A stretch of 64,000 nt of DNA from Antechinus flavipes (GCF_016432865.1 NC_067404.1:75640001-75704000); one strand, 5' to 3'; numbered from the stretch's first letter, positions 5,262 to 49,657 are shown. Notes: a model not told the origin generated them from the sequence alone. A program made the numbers and translations.

Positions 5262-5391
5262 ATGGCTGGCAACCGTAACTTCTATATTGGTCTGACCTTG
5301 GCTCTCTGCTCCAGCATTTTCATTGGTTCGAGCTTCATCCTAAAGAAGAAAGGACTTCTTAAGCTTGCCAGCAGGGGCTCTATGAGAGCAG
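5262..5391 (+). CDS. NIPA2-like coding exon 1
   Basis: Acceptor AG 5239-5240; [43 protein letters not shown]; donor GTATAG 5392. Confidence 0.93.
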
Positions 5392-8300
5392 GTATAGCAA
5401 ACTCTATATTCCTGAGTTGACATGTCAGAATTCTCCTTTCTTTTTTGGACTGAAAAGATAGGTGGTGTTAATATAGAAAGGAGGCTAAATGGGACTCTTT
5501 AGGTATTGTTATTGCTAATTGACTATCAGAAAAGGTTGAAATTAATTCAAAGATACATTTTAGGAATGTCACTGAATTTGATTTATCTTTATCCATGATA
5601 ATGGAGGAAAGGGATAACTGGTGGGCATTGGATGTACTTTCTGGTTTGGAGAAGACCTGAGCTTTTGAAGGCACTGTGCTGAAGATACAGCAGTTACTCT
5701 GTACATCTCTAAGAAAAAGTCATTTAAGGAGAAGTTAATAGGTTCAGATTTTAAAAGCTTATTCCATTCAAATTCTTTTGTTCTGGGTTCATGCTCAGAA
5801 GTTGCATAGTATAGACCAGAATTAGGTTGTATTTGCTTCAGCTCTTGCCCATCGGTATGTGCTGTGCCCAGATCCAAAGCCCACTTCCTGAGGCAGAGTT
5901 TCCCCTCTCTGGATGTGTTCCCCTCTCTGCCACAGGTTTTGGGTTCTGTGGGTATCTTCTGCAGAAGAACTGTGCAAGCTCTGTTCAAAATGCTCAGTCT
6001 TTGAGGGGCTAAAAAAGAAAAACCTTTAGGAAGTTAGCAGGAGGAACCCTCCAAATTATAGCAGGTCAGGAAGAAAGGGAAAATTGTCTTTTTGTCCAAA
6101 GAAAACTGCTCCAGTTGGATTATTGCTCTCCTTTATTCCAGTGCTTTAGATCTGGTAGCTTGATAATTTCTCTTCCTTTTTTCAGGTCATGGTGGCCATG
6201 CATACCTAAAGGAGTGGCTGTGGTGGGCTGGACTAATATCCAGTAAGTCTTCTGGTTTGTTCATGAAATTGCAGCCTGAAAGATAAATAGCAAAACGAGA
6301 CAACCAGTTCTTTTAGAGTAAGCTGGAAAGATAACCATTCTGCATGATGCTTGTAAAACAGGTTTTTCCATTGTAATCCTATCAACCAATTGTATTCTGG
6401 TAAAAAAATATATATGTCAATGTGCCTAACAGATTTTTGATCACACCATAACTTGGTCTAGCATAGACTAACAGGCCCTCATGAGTTTCTCTTTTGCTTC
6501 CAAAAGAATATTTCTTTTCCTACATCATGAACACTAAAATGCATAAGTATACCCACACATTGTCACACAGGTAGAGACACATCTTCACTCCCCTTTCCCA
6601 TGTGAGAAGCCTCTCAGGTGTCTTCCTATCCTAGCTCCTTGTCCATTTTCCAAGTAGACAAATTCATGGCAGGGGCAACGTTGCTTCTGGGGCCTTGACT
6701 TAACGTTACAGTGCTTGGGCCTCTCACCACTTACAGATGACTTTCTAGGAGAGCTGTACAAAACAGTGACATTCAGGGGACAAGTATTAGCATGAAACAA
6801 AGATTACCCTAGTGTTTAACACTTGCAGGTGCTCAAGGGCCTTGAATGAAAATCCTGATTCTTCAGACTTTTGCTCCAGTAGAATGGTCTTGTAATCACA
6901 GCAAAATGAAATGCTTATTACCTCCTGTTAGTTCTGCTAAACTTATTTTAATATTTAATCAGATCATCCACGTTTATTTTATAGTACATTTTGAATTAGG
7001 GTGTAATACTTAATCCTTGCTTCCTAGAATTATACACCCAATTTGCCAGGGTAGCCATCAGTTACTGGTACAGGATCCTAATTTCACTCCTGCTCAAGGA
7101 TTTATGATATCAAGGAACAAGTTACATAGAAGAACAAGGTAAAGAAGAGTTTGTTAAGCAAACACATGTAAGAGCTCAAGACTTTGCATTAGGTAGGCTT
7201 GACTTGAATGGTTGAATGAATGAACAAATAAATAAATGAAGCACTTTTGAAGCATTTACCATGTACTAAATACTGAGCTAAGCCCTGGGATTACAAATAG
7301 AATAGTCACACAATCCACAGTCCTCTTAGGGAGCTCACATTCTAATGGGGGGGGGGGAGGGGAAACAACCCATTTAGAAAGTTTCCACTACCAGTGGGAT
7401 GGAAAGGTCCTAGGGTATGTGGCAAAGCACATGGTTCGGTCTCTTCTTTAATAATATTTCTACTGTTAAAATCATATCAGTTTCTGATGTTGAACCGTCA
7501 GACAGGGCCAAGGATTTTGGTCCAAGAATTTCCTTTTCTACATCTTCAGTAACTTTGTCTATAGCATCCGCTAGAGCAGTGAGTGGGCTGCTTCTCCACG
7601 GGAGTTGCTGCCCAGGGTTGATAGCTGAGGGCTCTGGGCTCGAACAGGTGCTATTCCCGAGGTTCTTGGGCCCAGGGCTCTGGGCTATCACCATTGGGAT
7701 CTGAGGGGAGATGGTGGTGATGGTGGGGATTTCACTTTTCTGGCACATGCTGCCTCCTGTTTTTCCCTCAGGGTACCTGACTGCTTCAGCTAGGCTGGCT
7801 TGCCTGTTCTGTGTGTAAGAGGTGGTGGGGCTGGCTGGCCCCTTTTCCACAGGAGTTGCTTCCCCAGATGATGGCAGGACCAGTGGTCTGGGAGCCACTC
7901 CTAGGGCTCCCGTGCTTATCCGCCTGTTGGTGGCAGTTGGTCAGCAATTGTTGGTGGTGGTGATGAGGAAGGTGGGACCCTTCTCCACGATGATTTCTCC
8001 CCTCCATGTGGCTGTGGGGGCTGGGCTGGTAGCAGATCTGGTGGTGTGGGGGGCACTGCTTTTCCTAAAGTTCTTGGGTTCAGGGTCCCAGACTGTCCCC
8101 ATCAAGATCTGGCGAGAGATGGCAGTCACCCTGTAGTTGCCGTAGATAATGACATTGTACTTAGGCTAAGTTTTCTTTGTAATGAAGATTATTTTTCTAA
8201 CCAGGAAAGTTGCTTCTCCTTTGCAGTGGGAATCGGAGAAGCTGCCAATTTTGCTGCGTATGCTTTTGCCCCAGCCACACTAGTAACGCCCTTGGGTGCA

Positions 8301-10862
8301 CTGAGTGTGTTAGTCAGGTAAGCAATATTTAGGTGCTTGATTTGAGTCTGTGTCCTAGCAACATGAAGTGATGATGTATTATTGTTCAAAATATTTTACT
8401 CCATTTTTCCAATATTCTTGTTCTCTTATATTCTTTTCCTAAACTTTAGTGATTGGACTTGGTTTCACTTCCTAGGAGGAAAAAAAAATTGTTTCCCTTA
8501 ACTATCTAATTTGGGGGGAAAGTTTCATTTTGGAATTACTGGAGTCTACTTTTGTGATGAATTCTTTTTTGTGAACAGAGAAGACTGTTTTCTTCCTGCC
8601 CCTCCAACCATGACCCAGCTTGACTGGGTTTTATATATCTTGCTATGTCCTCTCCTGGTTCTTCTTTTTTTTGTTTTTGTTTTTGTTTTAGGAGCTGCTC
8701 GGTCCAGTTAAATGCTTAGCCATCTCACTCCTGTTGAAGTTTTATATAATAAAAACTCTTACGAATCTTGTTGCTCTTACTGTCCCTCAGTATCCTCCCT
8801 GTCTTGAGCTAGTATGGTATTGATTTATAGATGGAGGTTATTAGTAAAAAATCTCTGCTTAGGTCTTCTTGACATGTTTTATGTTTCCCCTCAGTTCGGT
8901 TTTGTCCTCTTTCTTCTTGAATGAGAAATTGAACATTCACGGGAAGATTGGCTGTATGCTAAGTATTTTGGGCTCAACAATGATGGTGATCCACGTGCCC
9001 CAGGAGGACATGAAACTCACCTTGGCAGAGATGTCTGAGAAGTTGCGAAGTCCAGGTACCAGACGTGGAATTCTAGCATGATTTTGGTTTGACAAAAAGT
9101 TTGGTCAGCATTATAGTTTCTTCTGGCTCCCTTATGGTTTAGGGAGTCCCCATTTTTACACTGTCCCAGTTTGATACTTCAGGCCTATTCCAGTGTCTGG
9201 TTGTGGTACAGAGGTGGCTATGCATTCTCTAGGCTTGTGCAAGCTCTGCTATGATTGGGTTCTAAGCTGAAAAGGCTCCGAATATGATTCTTTTGACAAC
9301 AGTATCTATTGTCTGAGGATTAGCCTTCCTAAATGTAGAGCAGCATCTCCTCAGTTGGATGGCCACTAGTCAATAAAGGCTTTGGACAGGACACCCAATT
9401 TCTTCCATCTTCTACTTCTTACACTTTTTCTAATTCACTAAACTCGCTACTCTCATTACCTGTCTCTGTTTCTGATTATGTTAATCTGAGCATATCTAGC
9501 AATTTCTTGGAAAGTACTATCTTGGAAGACAAGAGATAAGAGGAAATCTCCAACTCTTTCTGGGATAGTATATTTTGTTAACTCTGGGCTTTATTAAACA
9601 CATCTGTGAGTTTCATACTACATGATTGATCATATCAGTAGTTTTTAGCATTTTTATGACATCTCCTGCCTCCCCCTGCCATAATTCACTTTGTGAGAAC
9701 AAACAAGGTTTGGTTTGATCCCTAGAGAAAGAGAAGTTTTGTTTTCCTCCATAAAGTTCAGAGGTAAACTTTCCCATTTGTTTAGTGAATAAAGATGGTA
9801 GCCATAATGCAACTCGGGACCAGGACAAGAGACAGTGGTAGCTAGTTGTGAGGAGGCTGTGGACAGACCATAGCAATGATCTCTGACTGGGATCTTTAGG
9901 GCCCTCCTCCTGGTATTCCTTCAATTTTCATCAGAAAATCAGAACTGCTGCTATAGCACAGGAGGCCAGACAAACACATTGAGACTTACATTTCAGAAGC
10001 AGAGCCAGATCTACTCTTAGCTCTCTGCCCCACCTTCTCTCTGACTCTGCCCTTCTAGGATCTGAGCCAGACAGAGTGGATGGCAAAGGCCATTGTGTCC
10101 AAGCTGGACCTGAAAAAGAATTCCCAGCAGGTGGTAATCTAGCCCTTCCCGAATCCCTTCAGGGAGAGGGAACTCACTCCCTGCATGAGGCCTTTACCCT
10201 CATGGATAAAATTAGTAGCTAGGAAGTTTTTCCCAATATCAAGCTGAAATTTTCCCCTGTCCAGCTTCTACCCACTAATCCTAATTTTTCTATGTGGAAC
10301 CAAAAGAACAAGGCTCATTCCTTTTCTTTATAATCTTGAAACGGCTCTCTGGTTCAACCTTTTACAGTTTTAAGCATTCCCTACTTCCTTCAGCTGATCT
10401 TCATACATCATCTATGAATAGTGAATATTATTTATCTGTAAATATAAATAGTGAACATTTTATCTATCACTAGCCTGCTTACTCTCCTCTCAATATTCTC
10501 TGCTTATCATTGTCCTCCCTAAAATGTAGAATACACAGCAGTGTCCACTGTGGAATTGACCAGGCAGTGATGCTGGAACTTCCCTAATCTCGGACAGAAT
10601 GTCTCTTAATGTACCCCAGTGTTGCATTAGTTTTTTTGGCAGATATTTCAGTTACTCATTGAGCTTGTTGTAATCCACTACACCCTGGGCTTTTTTCAGA
10701 GGCTCTTGTGAATAGCCATTTTGTATTTGTGAACTTGATTTCTCTTAATCCAAATATGAAACCCCATGAATTAAAAATTTATGGAATTATGAAATGGGGT
10801 AGCTGTGCCTGGTAGTTGAAAGTGAGACTGCATTCTCAAATTTTATTTTATTTTTTTTAATC

Positions 10863-10909
<47 letters not shown>

Positions 10910-13900
10910 TTTAAAATAACTTTTTATTGATAGAACTCATGCCAGGGTAATTTTTTACAGCATTATCCCTTGCATTCACTTCTGTTCCGATTTTTCCCCT
11001 CCCTCCCTCCACCCCCTCCCCCAGATGGCAAGCAATCCTTTACATTGCACTCAAATTTTAATAAGACACAGAAGGTAGAGGGAGGAACAGGGACAGAAAG
11101 TATGAGGCAGACATTGTGGAAATGGGGGATAAGGGTGGCAGAGGAAAGGAATCATCGTGGTGAGAGGAGGGGGAAGGGGTATGAAGAATCACTCCCGTAA
11201 CCATGGATTAGAGTTGGGAATCCTTGGCAGCATGGATTCAAGTGGAGGGAGAATATTACTGAAGGGGCGGGAATTGGAGGTCTTGCTTTTGTAGTTTTGG
11301 GAGGGGAGAAACAAACTCCCTTTTGTCTGTGCCACTTTGGAGTTAGTTCATTAACAAATCCACCTCATTATCCCAGATGCTTTCCTCTGAGCGAGCTCAT
11401 ATTACCAGGCTGTGATTTGGGGTTAATATTCAATAGGTTGTAAATCATGCTCCTTTTATCTTTGAAACAGTTTGTACACAGCTTCAAGATTCCCCTTTGC
11501 AAACTTATTTCCTGCTATGGCTCCTTATAAACTTATATAGCATACTAACTAGGAAGGAAGGGGAGGTGACCAGAGAACCCAAAGTAATATACAGTTTTAA
11601 CATACCACATCTTATCCAATTGAATCCTGTCTCTTTTTTTTTATAGCTTTTTATTTACAAAACATACACATGGGTAATTTGTTCAACATTGACCTTTGCA
11701 AAATCTTCTATTCCACATTTTCCCCTCCTTCTCCCCACCCTCCCCTAGATGGCAGATAGTCCAATATATGTTAAATATGTTTAAATGTATGTTAAATGCA
11801 ATATATGTATACATATTTATACAGTTGTCTTGCTGCACAAGAAAAATCAGATCTAGAAATAAAAAAAAACTTGAGAAGGAAAACAAAAATGCAAGCAAAC
11901 AATAACAGAAAGAGTAAATATGTTATGTTGTGGTCCACACTCAGTTCCCATAGTCCTCTCTCTGGGTGTAGATAGCTCTCTTCATTACTGAACAATTGGA
12001 ACTGGTTTGAATCATCTCATTGTTGAAGAGAGCCAAGTCCATCAGCATTGATCATCGTATAGTCTTGTTGCCGTGTACAGTGATCTTCTGGTTCTGCTCA
12101 TTTCACTCAGCATCAGTTCATGTAAGTCTCTCCAGGCCTCTCTGAAATGATTCTGCTGATCGTTTCTTATAGAACAATAATATTCCATCACATTCATATA
12201 CCATAACTTATTCAACCATTCTCCAATTGATGGGCAGCCACACAGTTTCCAGTTTCTTGCCACTACAAAAAGGGTTGATACAAATATTTTTGCACATATG
12301 GGTCCCTATCCCTTCTTTAAGATCTCTTTGGGATATAAGCTCAATAGAAACACTGCTGGATCAAAGGGGATGCAAAATTTTGATAACTTTTTGAGCATAG
12401 TTCCAAATGGCTCTCCAGAATGGCTGGATCCGTTCACAGTTCCAACAGTGTATCAACGTCCCAGTTTTCCCACATCCTCGCCAACATTTGTCATTATCTT
12501 TCCCTGTCACTCTAGTCAATCTGAGAGGTGTGTGGTGGTATCTCAGAGTTGTCTTAGTTTGCATTTCTCTGCTCAATAGTGATTTAGAGCCTATTTTCAC
12601 CTTTTCATATGACTAAAAATAACTTCAATTTCTTTGTCTGAAAATTGTCTGTTCATATCCTTTGACCATTTATCAATTGGAGAATGGTTTGATTTCTTAT
12701 AAATTTGAGTCAATTCTCTATATATTTTGGAGATGAGGCCTTTATCAGAACCTTTGAATGGAAAAATGTTTTCCCATTTTATTGTTTCCCTTCTAATCTT
12801 GTCTGCATTAGTTTTGCTTGTACAAAAACTTTTTAACTTAATATAATCAAAATTATCTATTTTGTGATCAATAATGATCTCTAGTTCTTCTTTGGTCACT
12901 AATCCCTTCCTCCTCCTCATGTCTGAGAGGTAAACTATGTTCTTCTGATTTTAACTCCTGTCTTTTTAAGTTTGATCTGGTGATCTAGTCTGTTGAAGTC
13001 CTTTTGGATCTTCATTCTGTTATCCTTTCTAGATTTGTATCATCTGCAAATTGATAAGCATACCCTCTATGTCTTTTTCCAAGTTATTGGTTAAATAATG
13101 TTAAATAGCACAGAACTGTTTGACACAGCTTGTGGACATCTCATTGTGAATATTACAAACTGAAGTTACCTTCTCGCTTAAATTTGCTTTCCAGCCTAAC
13201 CTCTTCCTTTCTGTTGATAGTACCTTTTCTTGTCACTAGAGATTGAAACCTTGGGTTCATTTTTATTTATTGGTTCTCAGTAAAGCACCTCCTATGTAGA
13301 ATGTAGGATTAAAACATAGACACCCCAGCGAGAGGCACTACAATCCTACAAGGAAAACACTTTCTCCTTTTTATAACTATAACATTGTGAATATTACAAG
13401 CTGAAGTTACCTTCCCACTTAAATTTGCCTTCCAGCTTAACCTCTTCCTTTCCATTGATAGAGTTCTGGCCCATAACAATAGTACTCTTTCTTGTCATTG
13501 GAGATTGAAACCTTGGGTCCATTTTTATTTATTGGTTCTCATTGAAGCACCTCCTATGTAGGATTATAGTATCACCAAGGACAATACTTTGTCCTTTTTA
13601 TAACTATAACATTGTGAATGTTACAAGCTGAAGTTACCTTCCCACTTAAATTTGCCTTCCAGCCTAACCTCTTCCTTTCCATTGATAGAGTTCTGGCCCA
13701 CAGTAATGATACTCTTTCTTGTCATTGGAGATCGAAACCTTGGGTTCATTTTTATTTATTGGTTCTCAGTAAAGCACCTCCTGTGTAGGATTTAGCATCA
13801 CCAAGGACAACACTTTCTCCTTTCCCCTCTCCCCAGATATTTTCTCTCTTCTCTGAATTAAGCAAGTTAGACAGACACCTCCTAGCTAATCTATTTCTCC

Positions 13901-15061
13901 AATTTTTTATTACATTTTTTCAGAGTTCAAGGTACATTTCCTATAATTACCCAGATTTAATAGTTCATATGATTTCTAACCTTTTTTGTAATGTTTTAGG
14001 TACCCGAATGTAAGTCCTTAACAAGAGCAGTGCTTCCAATGAGTCAAGGTATTAACTTGATGGCTCAAAAGCCATTTTCTCCATAATGAATTCCCTCCTA
14101 ATGTACCTGAACTCTGCTCTGATATGCCCTGACACACACAAATACACACACCTCAGGTTGTTTCCTGACAAGTATCTCTGGTGCAGATCCTATCTATCTC
14201 TTCACATTAAACCTTTTTTGATGTGGGCAGATGTAAGGAGAAAATTTAGAACTAAAACATAATTGGTTAATACGATTAAAGGACTGAAATGGATCCACAG
14301 TGCCTCTTGCTGGGGTGTATATATTTTAATGATTTGCCTGTCAGACATAACTGAAATAACTGAACATCAACAATGAAAATGTCTGTATAGTAATAGATTT
14401 CCTATTTTAAGTAACTTTTCTCCTTTTTTTTCCCTCAGGATTCATTGGCTTTGCCATTTATGTATTGCTCACTTCCACTACCCTCATCTTTGTGATAGGA
14501 CCTCGATATGGCCATACTAACGTCCTGGTGTATGTTCTGATCTGCTCCTCAGTTGGTTCTATTTCTGTGTCTTGCGTTAAGGGTTTGGGCATCTCCCTGA
14601 GAGAGCTCATTTCAGGGAAGCCTGTCCTGAAGGAGCCCCTTGGTTGGGCGCTTTTGTTTTGTCTGGTGATTTGTATAAGCATTCAGGTCAACTATCTGAA
14701 CCGAGCTTTGGACATTTTCAGTACTTCGATAGTTACTCCCATCTATTATGTCCTTTTCACCACAGCTGTTATGACCTGCTCTGCCATTCTCTTTAAGGAA
14801 TGGCAACTTATGGACCTAGACAGTGTCATTGGCACGATCAGTGGTTTCCTAACCATAGTTTTTGGCATTTTCCTTCTTCATGCCTTTCGAGAAATCCCTT
14901 TTTCTCCTGATCTGATTTATTTTTCTCAGAGGTCAAGTTTGGGTAATAACCACGCTGCTCCCCAGAGGGAAAACGAAAGGCAAATTCAGCCTCTCCTAGA
15001 GGAAGATGACCTCAACAAAGAGTTCCAGAATATTGAGGCTGAAGAGGTTGAAAATCTGTGA
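5262..15061 (+). CDS. Magnesium transporter NIPA2-like (NIPA/DMT family), spliced CDS, 353 aa
   Basis: Exons 5262-5391, 6186-6242, 8227-8317, 8895-9055, 14439-15061 total 1062 nt, frame intact, all GT-AG. Protein [33 protein letters not shown]...[13 protein letters not shown]...[24 protein letters not shown]...LNIHGKIGC...[10 protein letters not shown]...GIFLLHAF matches NIPA2/NIPAL1 motifs. Strong Kozak ACAATGG. Confidence 0.95.
6186..6242 (+). CDS. NIPA2-like coding exon 2
   Basis: 57 nt, [19 protein letters not shown]; CAG|...|GTAAGT. Confidence 0.93.
7205..7350 (-). mobile_element. L2 3'-end fragment
   Basis: GAATGAATGAA...AAGCATTTACCATGTAC...GAGCTCACATTCTA is the reverse L2 tail. Confidence 0.6.
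7410..8165 (-). pseudogene. Antisense coding-like relic in NIPA intron 3 (252 codons, one internal stop); parent unknown
   Basis: ORF-track ORFs 7941-8129 and 7410-7898 share one frame, separated only by TGA at 7943-7941; the frame opens at 8165; GC-rich relative to flanks; internal repeats. Confidence 0.45.
8227..8317 (+). CDS. NIPA2-like coding exon 3
   Basis: 91 nt, (M)[29 protein letters not shown]; donor GTAAGC. Confidence 0.95.
8895..9055 (+). CDS. NIPA2-like coding exon 4
   Basis: 161 nt, [38 protein letters not shown]...KLRSP; donor GTACCA. Confidence 0.93.
10090..10790 (-). mobile_element. L3/CR1 LINE fragment, old
   Basis: Degraded CR1-type 3' ORF2/tail sequence recognised by eye; boundaries approximate. 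Confidence 0.45.
10866..10904. repeat. (TA)n microsatellite
   Basis: About 19 perfect TA units. Confidence 0.95.
11633..12955 (-). mobile_element. 5'-truncated L1 (ORF2 C-terminus and 3' UTR)
   Basis: ORF-track peptides [13 protein letters not shown]...[31 protein letters not shown] and [26 protein letters not shown] are L1 ORF2; poly-T at the left end; possible TSD TCCTGTCT at 11625 and 12956. Confidence 0.92.
13142..13823. repeat. Tandem triplication, ~230-bp unit
   Basis: Units start CATTGTGAAT(A/G)TTACAA at 13142, 13383 and 13610. Confidence 0.9.
14439..15061 (+). CDS. NIPA2-like last coding exon
   Basis: Acceptor TTTTCCCTCAG 14438; [32 protein letters not shown]...EVENL*; TGA 15059-15061. 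Confidence 0.95.
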
Positions 15062-15717
15062 ATAATCTTAGGCAGAATGCTGTCTGTATTTTTGTTTCTG
15101 TTGGGTAAGGTGGCCTTTGTACTTTTGCTTAAGATTTACCCAGACCTCTGACATCCAGCCAAACCAAATCAGATCATATTGTGGAGAGGAGCAAATTAAT
15201 CATTAACTAGTAAGCAGTGGAACAGCAAAATCTTCCCAACTGCCATGTTGTTTAGTAGTCTCATTTGCTTCCCTTGCATAATATATACTGTGATTGTAAG
15301 ACATGGTGCTAGATGTATAAGTGGATGTATATATACACCAGTGAAGTATTTGTGAAAAAAACCATCTATCCCTCATCACTAGGTCATACAGAAACCTAAA
15401 AGCATTGTTGTTTGTCTGATTTACTTGGTACTTGGTACTGGATTTACTTGAGAACTCAAGTGTTTTAAGTGTTTCATGAATTCTAGTTTACTTTTTGAAA
15501 AAATGTTTTTAAAGGTGTTTTTGTGTCACTTTTAGTGCTGAATCCTGATCATCCTGAAGTTTGTACCAAGGACTTGAGTATAATTACTAATAACTGCTGG
15601 CTGCTGCCACCTGCCTGGTAAGAGGATTTGATTCTAAAAACCACATTCAGAAATTATTACTTGTTCTTTCTCTTCCCCCCCCCCGCCCCCAAAGCTCTAA
15701 TACCTAAGATTCTAGAG

Positions 15718-19211: not shown

Positions 19212-20980
<1,769 letters not shown>

Positions 20981-27106: not shown

Positions 27107-49657
<22,551 letters not shown>

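What the first reader, a model, noticed from the sequence alone, without database searches (positions are those of the whole stretch)
5262..15061. Intact X-linked NIPA Mg2+ transporter: candidate fourth ohnologue lost in eutherians
Seen: a complete 353-aa NIPA-family ORF with five coding exons, so not a retrocopy, next to TIMM8A-BTK. Established: human NIPAL1 neighbours TXK/TEC (4p12), NIPAL4 neighbours ITK/CYFIP2 (5q33), NIPA2 neighbours CYFIP1 (15q11), and I know of no NIPA gene at the human BTK locus. Inference: the BTK paralogon kept its own NIPA copy in this lineage and eutherians deleted it. That would be an uncharacterised transporter with its own acidic C-tail (…[24 protein letters not shown]), divergent from NIPA2.
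Basis: partly seen in the sequence, partly recalled or inferred. Interest (0 to 1): 0.85.

Follow-up and report, generated by a model that had tools for sequence, protein, structure and literature searches.

The report
Extra NIPA transporter gene beside BTK
This marsupial window holds an intact gene for a magnesium-transporter-like membrane protein that sharks, fish, birds, platypus and marsupials all keep next to TIMM8A and BTK, and that placental mammals have lost, leaving only a broken last exon at the same spot.

Summary
Five GT-AG coding exons (5262-15061, + strand) splice to a 353-aa NIPA-family protein. It is identical to the public model 'magnesium transporter NIPA2-like [Antechinus flavipes]'.

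It is not a NIPA2 copy. The gene order TAF7-like / NIPA / TIMM8A (with BTK beyond it where the flank reached) recurs in two other marsupials, platypus, a bird and spotted gar. Elephant shark has NIPA tail-to-tail with TIMM8A. In trees this clade (support 96/100) is separate from NIPA2 and NIPAL1, and it contains no placental protein. Forcing the marsupial genes together with NIPA2 is rejected (AU p = 2e-5).

The new result concerns the loss. Five placental loci carry a decayed last exon at the syntenic site. They share two frameshifts and one stop codon, and they branch as sister to the marsupial genes. So placentals pseudogenised the gene rather than cleanly deleting it. Hystricognath rodents later lost that segment.

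All NIPA2 substrate-site residues are conserved. Marsupial dN/dS is 0.23-0.44, but the Antechinus branch alone looks relaxed.

'Fourth ohnologue' is plausible but unproven. The nodes between clades are unresolved, and NIPA1 and NIPAL4 sequences could not be retrieved.

The gene is annotated in databases, but I found no paper describing it. Interest is moderate.

The parts
5262..5391 (+). NIPA-X coding exon 1 (ATG; 130 nt; TM1)
   Evidence: The ORF starts at 5262 and the donor GT follows 5391. Pfam PF05653 E 2e-11.
6186..6242 (+). coding exon 2 (57 nt; [19 protein letters not shown])
   Evidence: AG/GT boundaries. The 57-nt length is the same in gar, bird and marsupials.
8227..8317 (+). coding exon 3 (91 nt; holds E67 = human NIPA2 E70, G86, S89)
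   Evidence: AG/GT boundaries.
8895..9055 (+). coding exon 4 (161 nt; TM4 and the 4-5 loop, with the acidic patch reduced to E-D-M)
   Evidence: AG/GT boundaries. Pfam E 4e-15.
14439..15061 (+). coding exon 5 (623 nt including the stop; TM5-TM9 and a disordered acidic C-tail). This is the exon that survives as a relic in placentals.
   Evidence: AG acceptor and TGA at 15059-15061. Pfam E 3.8e-54. Tail pLDDT is below 50.
13349..13823 (.). 227-bp tandem duplication (2.1 copies) inside intron 4; not part of the gene product
   Evidence: Tandem Repeats Finder, 92% matches.
19212..20965 (-). TIMM8A (two coding exons), tail-to-tail with the NIPA gene; its stop codon lies 4.15 kb from the NIPA stop
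   Evidence: ORFs. Pfam PF02953 on both exons. 98% identical to opossum TIMM8A.
39638..39841 (-). BTK SH3-domain exon (context: BTK lies upstream of TIMM8A on the same strand)
   Evidence: The motif scan found KPLPPEP...ALYDY...WWRARDKNG. Pfam SH3_1 E 9e-13. BTK adjoins TIMM8A in every placental, bird and gar locus fetched.

Best explanation
The gene is the Antechinus flavipes orthologue of an old, separate jawed-vertebrate member of the NIPA (SLC57, drug/metabolite-transporter fold) family. This is the paralogue that databases label 'NIPA2-like' in tetrapods and zgc:101583 (or wrongly 'NIPA2') in fish. It has kept one genomic address since before sharks and bony vertebrates split, namely tail-to-tail with TIMM8A (shown directly in elephant shark). 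Bony vertebrates from gar to marsupials also have a TAF7-like gene on its other side. BTK lies beyond TIMM8A in the window, gar and the bird. It most likely works like NIPA2, as a nine-helix alternating-access carrier that lets Mg2+ (and possibly nucleotides) move down their gradient. This follows from two observations: every residue that lines the two NIPA2 substrate sites is unchanged, and the core is 69% identical to human NIPA2 without a single gap. What is its own is a disordered C-terminal tail with a conserved (H/Q)QPLL motif followed by acidic residues. In marsupials the loop 4-5 acidic 'staple' is also weakened (EEE to EEM, or EDM in Antechinus). Placental mammals inactivated the gene. 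A frameshifted, stop-containing last exon survives in carnivorans and one other boreoeutherian, and the segment was later deleted in hystricognath rodents. Shown here: gene structure, orthology, synteny, clade separation, the placental relic and its shared lesions, and purifying selection among marsupials. Inferred: transport function and substrate, origin by the two rounds of vertebrate genome duplication, and loss in the placental stem rather than somewhat later.
For: The gene model matches the public protein exactly. The order TAF7-like(-)/NIPA(+)/TIMM8A(-) is seen in Sminthopsis, Dromiciops, platypus, a gannet and spotted gar, with BTK(-) beyond TIMM8A in gannet and gar. Elephant shark has TIMM8A(+)/NIPA(-). 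Careful ML tree: NIPA-X 96/100, NIPA2 100/98, NIPAL1 100/100, with species-tree order inside NIPA-X. The AU test rejects marsupial NIPA-X plus NIPA2 as one clade (p = 1.8e-5). Axolotl and the lizard Hemicordylus each have both a NIPA-X and a NIPA2 protein. Placental relics give tblastn E down to 1e-24 with NIPA-X queries, against 1e-11 with dog NIPA2. The matches include the NIPA-X-specific tail (HQPLL..ED) and lie on the strand opposite TIMM8A, 3-4 kb beyond it. All five relics share a 2-nt deletion, a 1-nt deletion and a stop at the codon of R298. The relic clade (100) is sister to marsupial NIPA-X inside tetrapod NIPA-X (100). Human NIPA2 structure 9z6n matches at E 1.9e-147, ungapped over residues 3-306. 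The residues named in PMC13500462 (E70, S192, Q232, F28, G89, S92, Y252, Y253, F256, K145, K197, F268) are all conserved. The AlphaFold model has pLDDT 83, and Foldseek gives TM 0.83 to NIPA2. Pairwise dN/dS among marsupials is 0.23-0.44 and about 0.09 against the bird.
Against: On the Antechinus terminal branch there are 17 nonsynonymous and 6 synonymous changes (omega about 0.87, not different from neutrality, p = 0.46). The Sminthopsis branch has 9:11, so constraint may be fading in this species. The Antechinus-only changes at conserved sites are mild, however (E131D, K201R, I35L). No expression data could be examined. The branching order of NIPA-X, NIPA2, NIPAL1 and the fish CYFIP-linked type has under 50% support. 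NIPA1 and NIPAL4 are represented only by Foldseek identities of 42% and 50-51%. A separate NIPA2 in Antechinus itself was not retrieved. The relic is demonstrated only in carnivorans plus one other boreoeutherian. Sirenian-type loci showed nothing within the 10 kb that could be fetched.
Confidence: 0.85

Rival explanations
1. It is a recent or translocated duplicate of NIPA2 that arose in marsupials or therians, as its database name 'NIPA2-like' suggests.
For: Its closest reviewed proteins are NIPA2 (62-71% identity), and the public name says 'NIPA2-like'.
Against: It groups with platypus, sauropsid, amphibian and fish genes, not with tetrapod NIPA2. The constrained tree is rejected (AU p = 1.8e-5). 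The same neighbours are found in gar, bird and shark. Introns and exon lengths are conserved from gar onwards.
Confidence: 0.02
2. The paralogue is old but is not a 2R ohnologue. It could stem from a local or segmental duplication before or after the vertebrate genome duplications, and its position next to a TEC-family kinase would then be coincidental.
For: The nodes joining NIPA-X, NIPA2, NIPAL1 and the fish CYFIP-linked clade have 45-47% support. Basal NIPA-X tails (Amia, Hypomesus, coelacanth) share an RRNG-type C-terminus with NIPA2, which could point to a specific NIPA2/NIPA-X sister relationship. The paralogon argument rests on remembered human map positions that were not tested here.
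Against: Lamprey branches outside all jawed-vertebrate clades (92/88). The gene is present in shark and bony vertebrates. A short, unresolved burst of four lineages is what 2R predicts. From established maps (not tool-tested), NIPAL1 adjoins TXK/TEC, NIPAL4 lies near ITK/CYFIP2 and NIPA2 adjoins CYFIP1. In a teleost the NIPA2-type gene lies between HERC2 and a CYFIP gene.
Confidence: 0.25
3. In Antechinus the gene is an intact-looking open reading frame that is already drifting neutrally towards loss, repeating what happened in placentals.
For: The Antechinus branch has N:S = 17:6 and omega about 0.87. The marsupial stem is long (0.37 substitutions per site). The acidic staple is reduced to E-D-M. 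The koala model is flagged LOW QUALITY and the wombat entry is partial.
Against: There is no stop, frameshift or splice-site defect. All substrate-site residues are intact. The Antechinus-specific replacements are conservative. The pairwise Antechinus-Sminthopsis comparison still shows fewer nonsynonymous changes than neutrality predicts (p = 0.01). The counts are small.
Confidence: 0.12

Closest known systems
NIPA2 (SLC57A2), human structure 9z6n/9z7r
   Same: Same Pfam family and fold. The core is 69% identical and ungapped over residues 3-306. All Mg2+/nucleotide site residues and the K145/K197/F268 contacts are conserved.
   Different: It forms a separate clade and has a different locus (TIMM8A/BTK rather than CYFIP1/NIPA1). 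Its C-tail is unrelated (QPLL plus acidic residues, against RKDEK...SRRNGNL). The third acidic residue of the 4-5 loop patch is lost in marsupials.
zgc:101583 of zebrafish and its gar/coelacanth orthologues (named 'NIPA2' by NCBI in fish)
   Same: They fall in the same orthologue clade. Gar has the same five-exon structure and the same TAF7-like/TIMM8A/BTK neighbours.
   Different: Fish tails lack the tetrapod HQPLL-acidic ending, and some keep an RRNG-type C-terminus like NIPA2. I found no functional study.
NIPAL1 (NIPA3, SLC57A3) and NIPAL4 (NIPA4, ichthyin)
   Same: Same family, with 57-59% and 50-51% identity in Foldseek alignments. They are presumed sister ohnologues beside TXK/TEC and ITK/CYFIP2 (map positions are from general knowledge).
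   Different: They carry an N-terminal extension of about 60 residues that this protein lacks. NIPAL1 forms its own 100/100 clade, which includes an Antechinus NIPA3 (P0347). NIPAL4 was not placed in a tree.
Other genes kept by marsupials and monotremes but left as relics in placentals (for example vitellogenin remnants)
   Same: A syntenic, frameshifted exon remnant with lesions shared across orders shows loss by decay rather than by deletion.
   Different: Here only the last exon was detectable. The dating rests on carnivorans plus one other boreoeutherian, not on all placental superorders.

Membership tests
NIPA / SLC57 transporters (Pfam PF05653, DMT superfamily) | Mg_trans_NIPA domain above the Pfam gathering score | tested here: met
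   184 bits against a cut-off of 26.2 on exon 5 alone. Exons 1 and 4 also score above the cut-off.
NIPA / SLC57 transporters (Pfam PF05653, DMT superfamily) | Nine-helix DMT fold superposable on NIPA2 | tested here: met
   The alignment-based AlphaFold model has pLDDT 82.8. Foldseek gives TM 0.83 and E 1e-29 to NIPA2 models. The sequence match to solved structure 9z6n has E 1.9e-147.
NIPA / SLC57 transporters (Pfam PF05653, DMT superfamily) | Substrate-site residues of human NIPA2 (E70, S192, Q232; F28, G89, S92, Y252, Y253, F256) | tested here: met
   All are identical in the window protein (E67, S189, Q229, F25, G86, S89, Y249, Y250, F253).
NIPA / SLC57 transporters (Pfam PF05653, DMT superfamily) | Measured Mg2+ (or nucleotide) transport | not testable with these tools
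   This needs expression and flux assays.
NIPA2 orthologue group | Falls inside the NIPA2 clade | tested here: not met
   The clades are separate (96/100 against 100/98). The AU test gives p = 1.8e-5 against joining them.
NIPA2 orthologue group | Lies beside CYFIP1/NIPA1 | tested here: not met
   The neighbours are TIMM8A and BTK. In a teleost the CYFIP/HERC2-linked gene is a different clade.
Vertebrate 'NIPA2-like'/zgc:101583 orthologue group (NIPA-X) | Monophyly with species-tree order from fish to mammals | tested here: met
   The clade has 34 rows at 96/100. Mammals 95/88, tetrapods 100/99.
Vertebrate 'NIPA2-like'/zgc:101583 orthologue group (NIPA-X) | Conserved position tail-to-tail with TIMM8A | tested here: met
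   Seen in the window, two other marsupials, platypus, a bird, gar and elephant shark.
2R ohnologue quartet (NIPA1/2, NIPAL1, NIPAL4, NIPA-X) | Duplication after the split from invertebrates and before the jawed-vertebrate radiation | tested here: inconclusive
   Invertebrates and lamprey fall outside (100/99, 92/88) and shark falls inside NIPA-X (98). The nodes between clades are under 50%, and lamprey is a long branch.
2R ohnologue quartet (NIPA1/2, NIPAL1, NIPAL4, NIPA-X) | Each copy sits in one of four paralogous chromosome blocks (TEC-family kinase, CYFIP, GABA-A clusters) | not tested
   Only the BTK block and a teleost HERC2/CYFIP block were seen.

The most novel reading that the evidence does not exclude
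NIPA-X is the fourth 2R ohnologue of the NIPA2/NIPAL1/NIPAL4 set. That would make it a seventh ancestral vertebrate SLC57 transporter that human-centred nomenclature has missed. It would have been inactivated once, in the placental stem lineage, by lesions still readable today (a 2-nt and a 1-nt deletion and an Arg-to-stop change in the last exon). Marsupials, monotremes, birds, amphibians and fish would therefore have a Mg2+/nucleotide carrier with no placental counterpart.
Probability: 0.55. Interest if true: 0.55.

Novelty: new member of a known kind. Interest (0 to 1): 0.45.

Why it matters
The SLC57/NIPA family is listed with six members because the list was drawn up from human genes (PMC9333335). 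This gene shows that jawed vertebrates ancestrally had a further, well-conserved member, which most non-placental vertebrates still carry. It also exposes a naming error. In fish the BTK-linked gene is called 'NIPA2' and the CYFIP-linked one 'NIPA2-like'. Zebrafish or medaka 'nipa2' results may therefore concern the wrong orthologue of the human epilepsy-associated gene. The placental relic gives a clean, datable case of transporter loss on the conserved part of the X chromosome. Zebrafish zgc:101583 offers a ready knockout model. This is a tidy evolutionary and annotation finding, not a new mechanism.

Tried and rejected
- **Single-sequence AlphaFold.** The model was unusable (pLDDT 42) and was replaced by an alignment-based model.
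- **NIPA1 and NIPAL4 sequences for the tree.** I could not obtain them. The 50%-identity representative search returned a frog NIPA3, lamprey and invertebrates at the top. The NIPA3-seeded search returned only NIPAL1 and fish long forms in its 120 rows. I spent the third search on TIMM8A, to reach placental loci. Only Foldseek identities stand in for these two paralogues.
- **A separate NIPA2 beside CYFIP1 in the Antechinus genome.** This could not be confirmed. Earlier scan notes had nothing on it and the kiwi NIPA2 look-up found no record.
- **tblastn-only exon mapping.** It missed the 57- and 91-nt exons, so I replaced it with exact peptide matching.
- **Relics of exons 1-4 in placentals.** Per-exon HMMs against six-frame translations found nothing above noise.
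- **Relics in other placentals.** None was found within 10 kb of TIMM8A in porcupine, two mole-rat species or sirenian-type loci. DNA alignment shows the rodents lack the whole cat segment 14.8-20.3 kb. For the sirenian-type loci the flank is simply not alignable beyond about 14.9 kb, so nothing can be said.
- **Literature searches.** Searches for zgc 101583, NIPA2-like, NIPA with ohnolog, TIMM8A+TAF7L+NIPA2 and NIPAL1+NIPAL4+TXK+ITK found no description of this gene.
- **Species names for loci L007 and L015-L018.** No tool supplied them.
Full report
**1. What is in the sequence**

The + strand between 5262 and 15061 carries five open segments whose translations read like a NIPA transporter. 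All four introns have GT...AG ends. The exons are 5262-5391, 6186-6242, 8227-8317, 8895-9055 and 14439-15061.

- Three of the exons, scanned separately, match Pfam PF05653 Mg_trans_NIPA, with 184 bits for exon 5.
- A protein search with exon 5 found a 100% match to 'magnesium transporter NIPA2-like [Antechinus flavipes]' (P0001, 353 aa, on an 86.6-Mb contig). My spliced product is identical to it.
- The window therefore comes from the yellow-footed antechinus, and the gene is already in public annotation under an uninformative name.
- Downstream on the - strand lies TIMM8A: exon 2 at 19215-19373 and exon 1 at 20840-20965, both PF02953. Further on lies a BTK SH3 exon at 39638-39841.
- The NIPA gene and TIMM8A are tail-to-tail, with stop codons 4.15 kb apart.

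**2. Orthologues and synteny**

The best hits after the marsupials are 'NIPA2-like' proteins of platypus, birds, tuatara, squamates, turtles, salamanders, caecilians and lungfish. After these come coelacanth, gar and teleost proteins that UniProt calls zgc:101583 and NCBI calls 'NIPA2'. Placental proteins appear only as true NIPA2, with lower coverage.

Fetching the DNA around several orthologues gave these gene orders:

| Species | Order |
|---|---|
| Gannet, spotted gar | TAF7-like(-) / NIPA(+) / TIMM8A(-) / BTK(-) |
| Sminthopsis, Dromiciops, platypus | TAF7-like(-) / NIPA(+) / TIMM8A(-) |
| Elephant shark | NIPA tail-to-tail with TIMM8A |

Exact mapping of the known proteins onto these loci shows five coding exons everywhere. 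The internal exons are 57, 91 and 161 nt from gar to marsupials.

**3. Phylogeny**

I built a careful IQ-TREE analysis of 69 full-length proteins: this clade, tetrapod NIPA2, NIPAL1/NIPA3 including the Antechinus NIPA3, a teleost long form, lampreys and five invertebrate outgroups.

- Support values are NIPA-X 96/100, NIPA2 100/98, NIPAL1 100/100 and teleost long form 97/97.
- Inside NIPA-X the order follows the species tree: ray-finned fishes, coelacanth, lungfish, amphibians, then mammals plus sauropsids, with platypus next to marsupials.
- Forcing the five marsupial genes into one clade with tetrapod NIPA2 costs 112 log-likelihood units and is rejected (AU p = 1.8e-5).
- Axolotl and the lizard Hemicordylus each contribute both a NIPA-X and a NIPA2 protein, so the two are paralogues, not alternative names.
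- The teleost long form lies between HERC2 and a CYFIP gene and shares the NIPA2 tail signature (RKEER...SRRNG). It is therefore the fish counterpart of NIPA2, and the NCBI names in fish are effectively swapped.
- The order in which the four clades join has under 50% support.
- NIPA1 and NIPAL4 could not be retrieved as sequences. A Foldseek search of the AlphaFold model against Swiss-Prot gives identities of 62-71% to NIPA2, 57-59% to NIPA3, 50-51% to NIPA4, 42% to NIPA1 and about 25% to NIPAL2/3. The protein is therefore not a displaced NIPA1 or NIPAL4.

**4. What happened in placentals**

I used the TIMM8A exon to find placental TIMM8A proteins, then fetched TIMM8A with 10 kb of flank from a range of placental assemblies. 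In every case BTK precedes TIMM8A and no gene is called downstream.

- tblastn with NIPA-X proteins nevertheless finds a match in five loci (L007, L015, L016, L017, L018). It lies on the strand opposite TIMM8A and 3-4 kb beyond it, which is exactly where exon 5 should be.
- E-values reach 1e-24 with the platypus protein on L017. Dog NIPA2 gives only 1e-11 there and does not reach the tail.
- A DNA alignment with functional exon 5 from six species shows the whole exon, riddled with indels.
- All five relics share four lesions: a 2-nt deletion at exon-5 position 143, a 1-nt deletion at 174, a 3-nt insertion at 498, and a stop at the codon of Antechinus R298 (CGA to TGA or TAA). Four of them share further 1-nt deletions. 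Two carry separate SINE insertions.
- The frame-corrected read-through, with X at each break, keeps family motifs (FKEWQ, GFLT, LLH.F) and the NIPA-X tail motif HQPLL..ED.
- In an exon-5 tree the five relics form a clade (100) on a long branch. That clade is sister to marsupial NIPA-X (83), with platypus next (83), inside tetrapod NIPA-X (100) and inside NIPA-X together with the elephant shark exon (98).
- One caveat applies to that tree. The read-through was framed on NIPA-X DNA, which could favour this placement. The unguided tblastn scores and the position point the same way.

Four relic loci contain Can-SINE-like heads and are carnivorans. L018 has none and is only 76% identical to L007 at the DNA level, which is about the divergence L007 shows against the rodent and sirenian-type loci (66-79% for most aligned blocks). 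It is probably from another boreoeutherian order. The species names I could attach to the accessions come only from memory, so I do not rely on them.

Hystricognath rodents lack the whole segment that holds the relic in the cat-type locus. Sirenian-type loci are not alignable beyond about 14.9 kb, so they are uninformative. No relics of exons 1-4 were detectable.

The gene was therefore already dead in the common ancestor of carnivorans and at least one other boreoeutherian lineage. Loss in the placental stem is likely, because no placental protein joins the clade, but it is not demonstrated.

**5. Is the Antechinus copy functional, and how would it work?**

The protein aligns without gaps to human NIPA2 over residues 3-306 (69% identity, E 1.9e-147 to PDB 9z6n). 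The 2026 cryo-EM study of NIPA2 (PMC13500462) gives the following picture:

- Site 1 is formed by E70, S192 and Q232.
- Site 2 is formed by F28, G89, S92, Y252, Y253 and F256.
- An acidic patch E133-E135 in loop 4-5 acts as a staple, through K145, K197 and F268.
- NIPA2 is a passive carrier of Mg2+ and nucleotides.

All site and contact residues are unchanged in the window protein. The patch is E-D-M in Antechinus and E-E-M or E-E-T in the other marsupials, while platypus, both birds and nearly all other NIPA-X proteins sampled keep E-E-E (tuatara and an anole have E-E-V). The alignment-based model is confident in the membrane core (pLDDT mostly above 90) and disordered from residue 307.

Selection results:

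- Pairwise dN/dS is 0.23-0.29 for comparisons with Dromiciops, 0.44 for Antechinus-Sminthopsis, and about 0.09 against the bird.
- The Antechinus-Sminthopsis comparison has fewer nonsynonymous changes than neutrality predicts (27:18, p = 0.01).
- Polarised with Dromiciops, the Antechinus branch has 17:6 (omega about 0.87, p = 0.46) and the Sminthopsis branch 9:11 (omega about 0.25).
- The Antechinus-only replacements at conserved sites are conservative.

My reading is a working transporter under weakened constraint in marsupials. There is a minority chance that the Antechinus copy is drifting towards loss.

**6. Comparison with what is known, and novelty**

It is a member of the NIPA/SLC57 family and most likely works like NIPA2. 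It is not a member of the NIPA2 orthologue group, since both the clade test and the synteny test failed. The family table in PMC9333335 lists six human members. Six full-text searches found no paper describing this seventh vertebrate paralogue, its linkage to BTK, or its loss in placentals.

Automated annotation and orthology databases already contain the gene. What is new is the interpretation, the placental pseudogene relic and the fish naming problem, not a new kind of molecule.

The 2R-ohnologue reading fits four things: the shark-to-mammal distribution, the outgroup position of lamprey, the unresolved four-way split, and the known adjacency of other NIPA genes to TEC-family kinases and CYFIP genes. 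The last point was not tested with tools here.

**7. Verdict**

Interest is moderate.

Noticed in passing
L003:10001-19672 (teleost Tautogolabrus locus) and proteins P0311, P0323, P0327, P0328, P0346, P0381: Teleosts have a 540-690-aa NIPA protein that NCBI names 'NIPA2-like'. It lies between HERC2 and a CYFIP gene and carries the NIPA2-type tail (RKEER...SRRNG). The BTK-linked paralogue in the same fishes is the one named 'NIPA2'. The two names appear to be swapped relative to human orthology.
   Followed up: partly
L003:27496-28134: An FNDC9-like gene (fn3 plus FNDC9_C) is nested inside the CYFIP gene next to the fish NIPA2-type gene. In human, from memory, FNDC9 is nested in CYFIP2 rather than CYFIP1.
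   Followed up: no
C-terminal tails of NIPA-X proteins (alignment): Tetrapod NIPA-X tails share PF(S/T)PDLLPLFL...(H/Q)QPLL followed by acidic residues. This motif is still legible in the placental relics. Basal fish NIPA-X (Amia, Hypomesus, coelacanth) instead end in an RRNG-type motif like NIPA2. The tail may carry a sorting signal.
   Followed up: partly
P0005 (koala) and P0009 (wombat): The koala orthologue is flagged 'LOW QUALITY PROTEIN' and the wombat entry is a 272-aa partial labelled NIPA2. This could be an assembly problem or the beginning of decay in vombatiform marsupials.
   Followed up: no
window 13349-13823 (intron 4): There is a 227-bp unit repeated 2.1 times at 92% identity. 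It produces a series of near-identical short ORFs on both strands. An L1-like ORF2 fragment lies nearby at 12597-12920 (- strand).
   Followed up: partly
L008:1-8475 (elephant shark): The gene upstream of TIMM8A in this scaffold is a mitochondrial-carrier gene, not BTK. The TIMM8A-BTK adjacency is therefore absent here, or lies beyond the flank.
   Followed up: no
L011:1-8660 and L017:1-21847: Two public gene models look chimeric. One is a BTK product of 1002 aa that starts with a Melibiase_2 (GLA-like) domain. The other is a 927-aa MAGUK/PDZ model spanning the whole BTK-TIMM8A locus.
   Followed up: no
window 10866-10904: A perfect (AT)19.5 microsatellite lies in intron 4.
   Followed up: no
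L007:~15480-15690 and L016:~15500-15680 (- strand, within the relic): Independent SINE insertions, with Can-SINE-like heads, interrupt the exon-5 relic at different positions in two carnivoran loci. They could be useful as lineage markers.
   Followed up: partly
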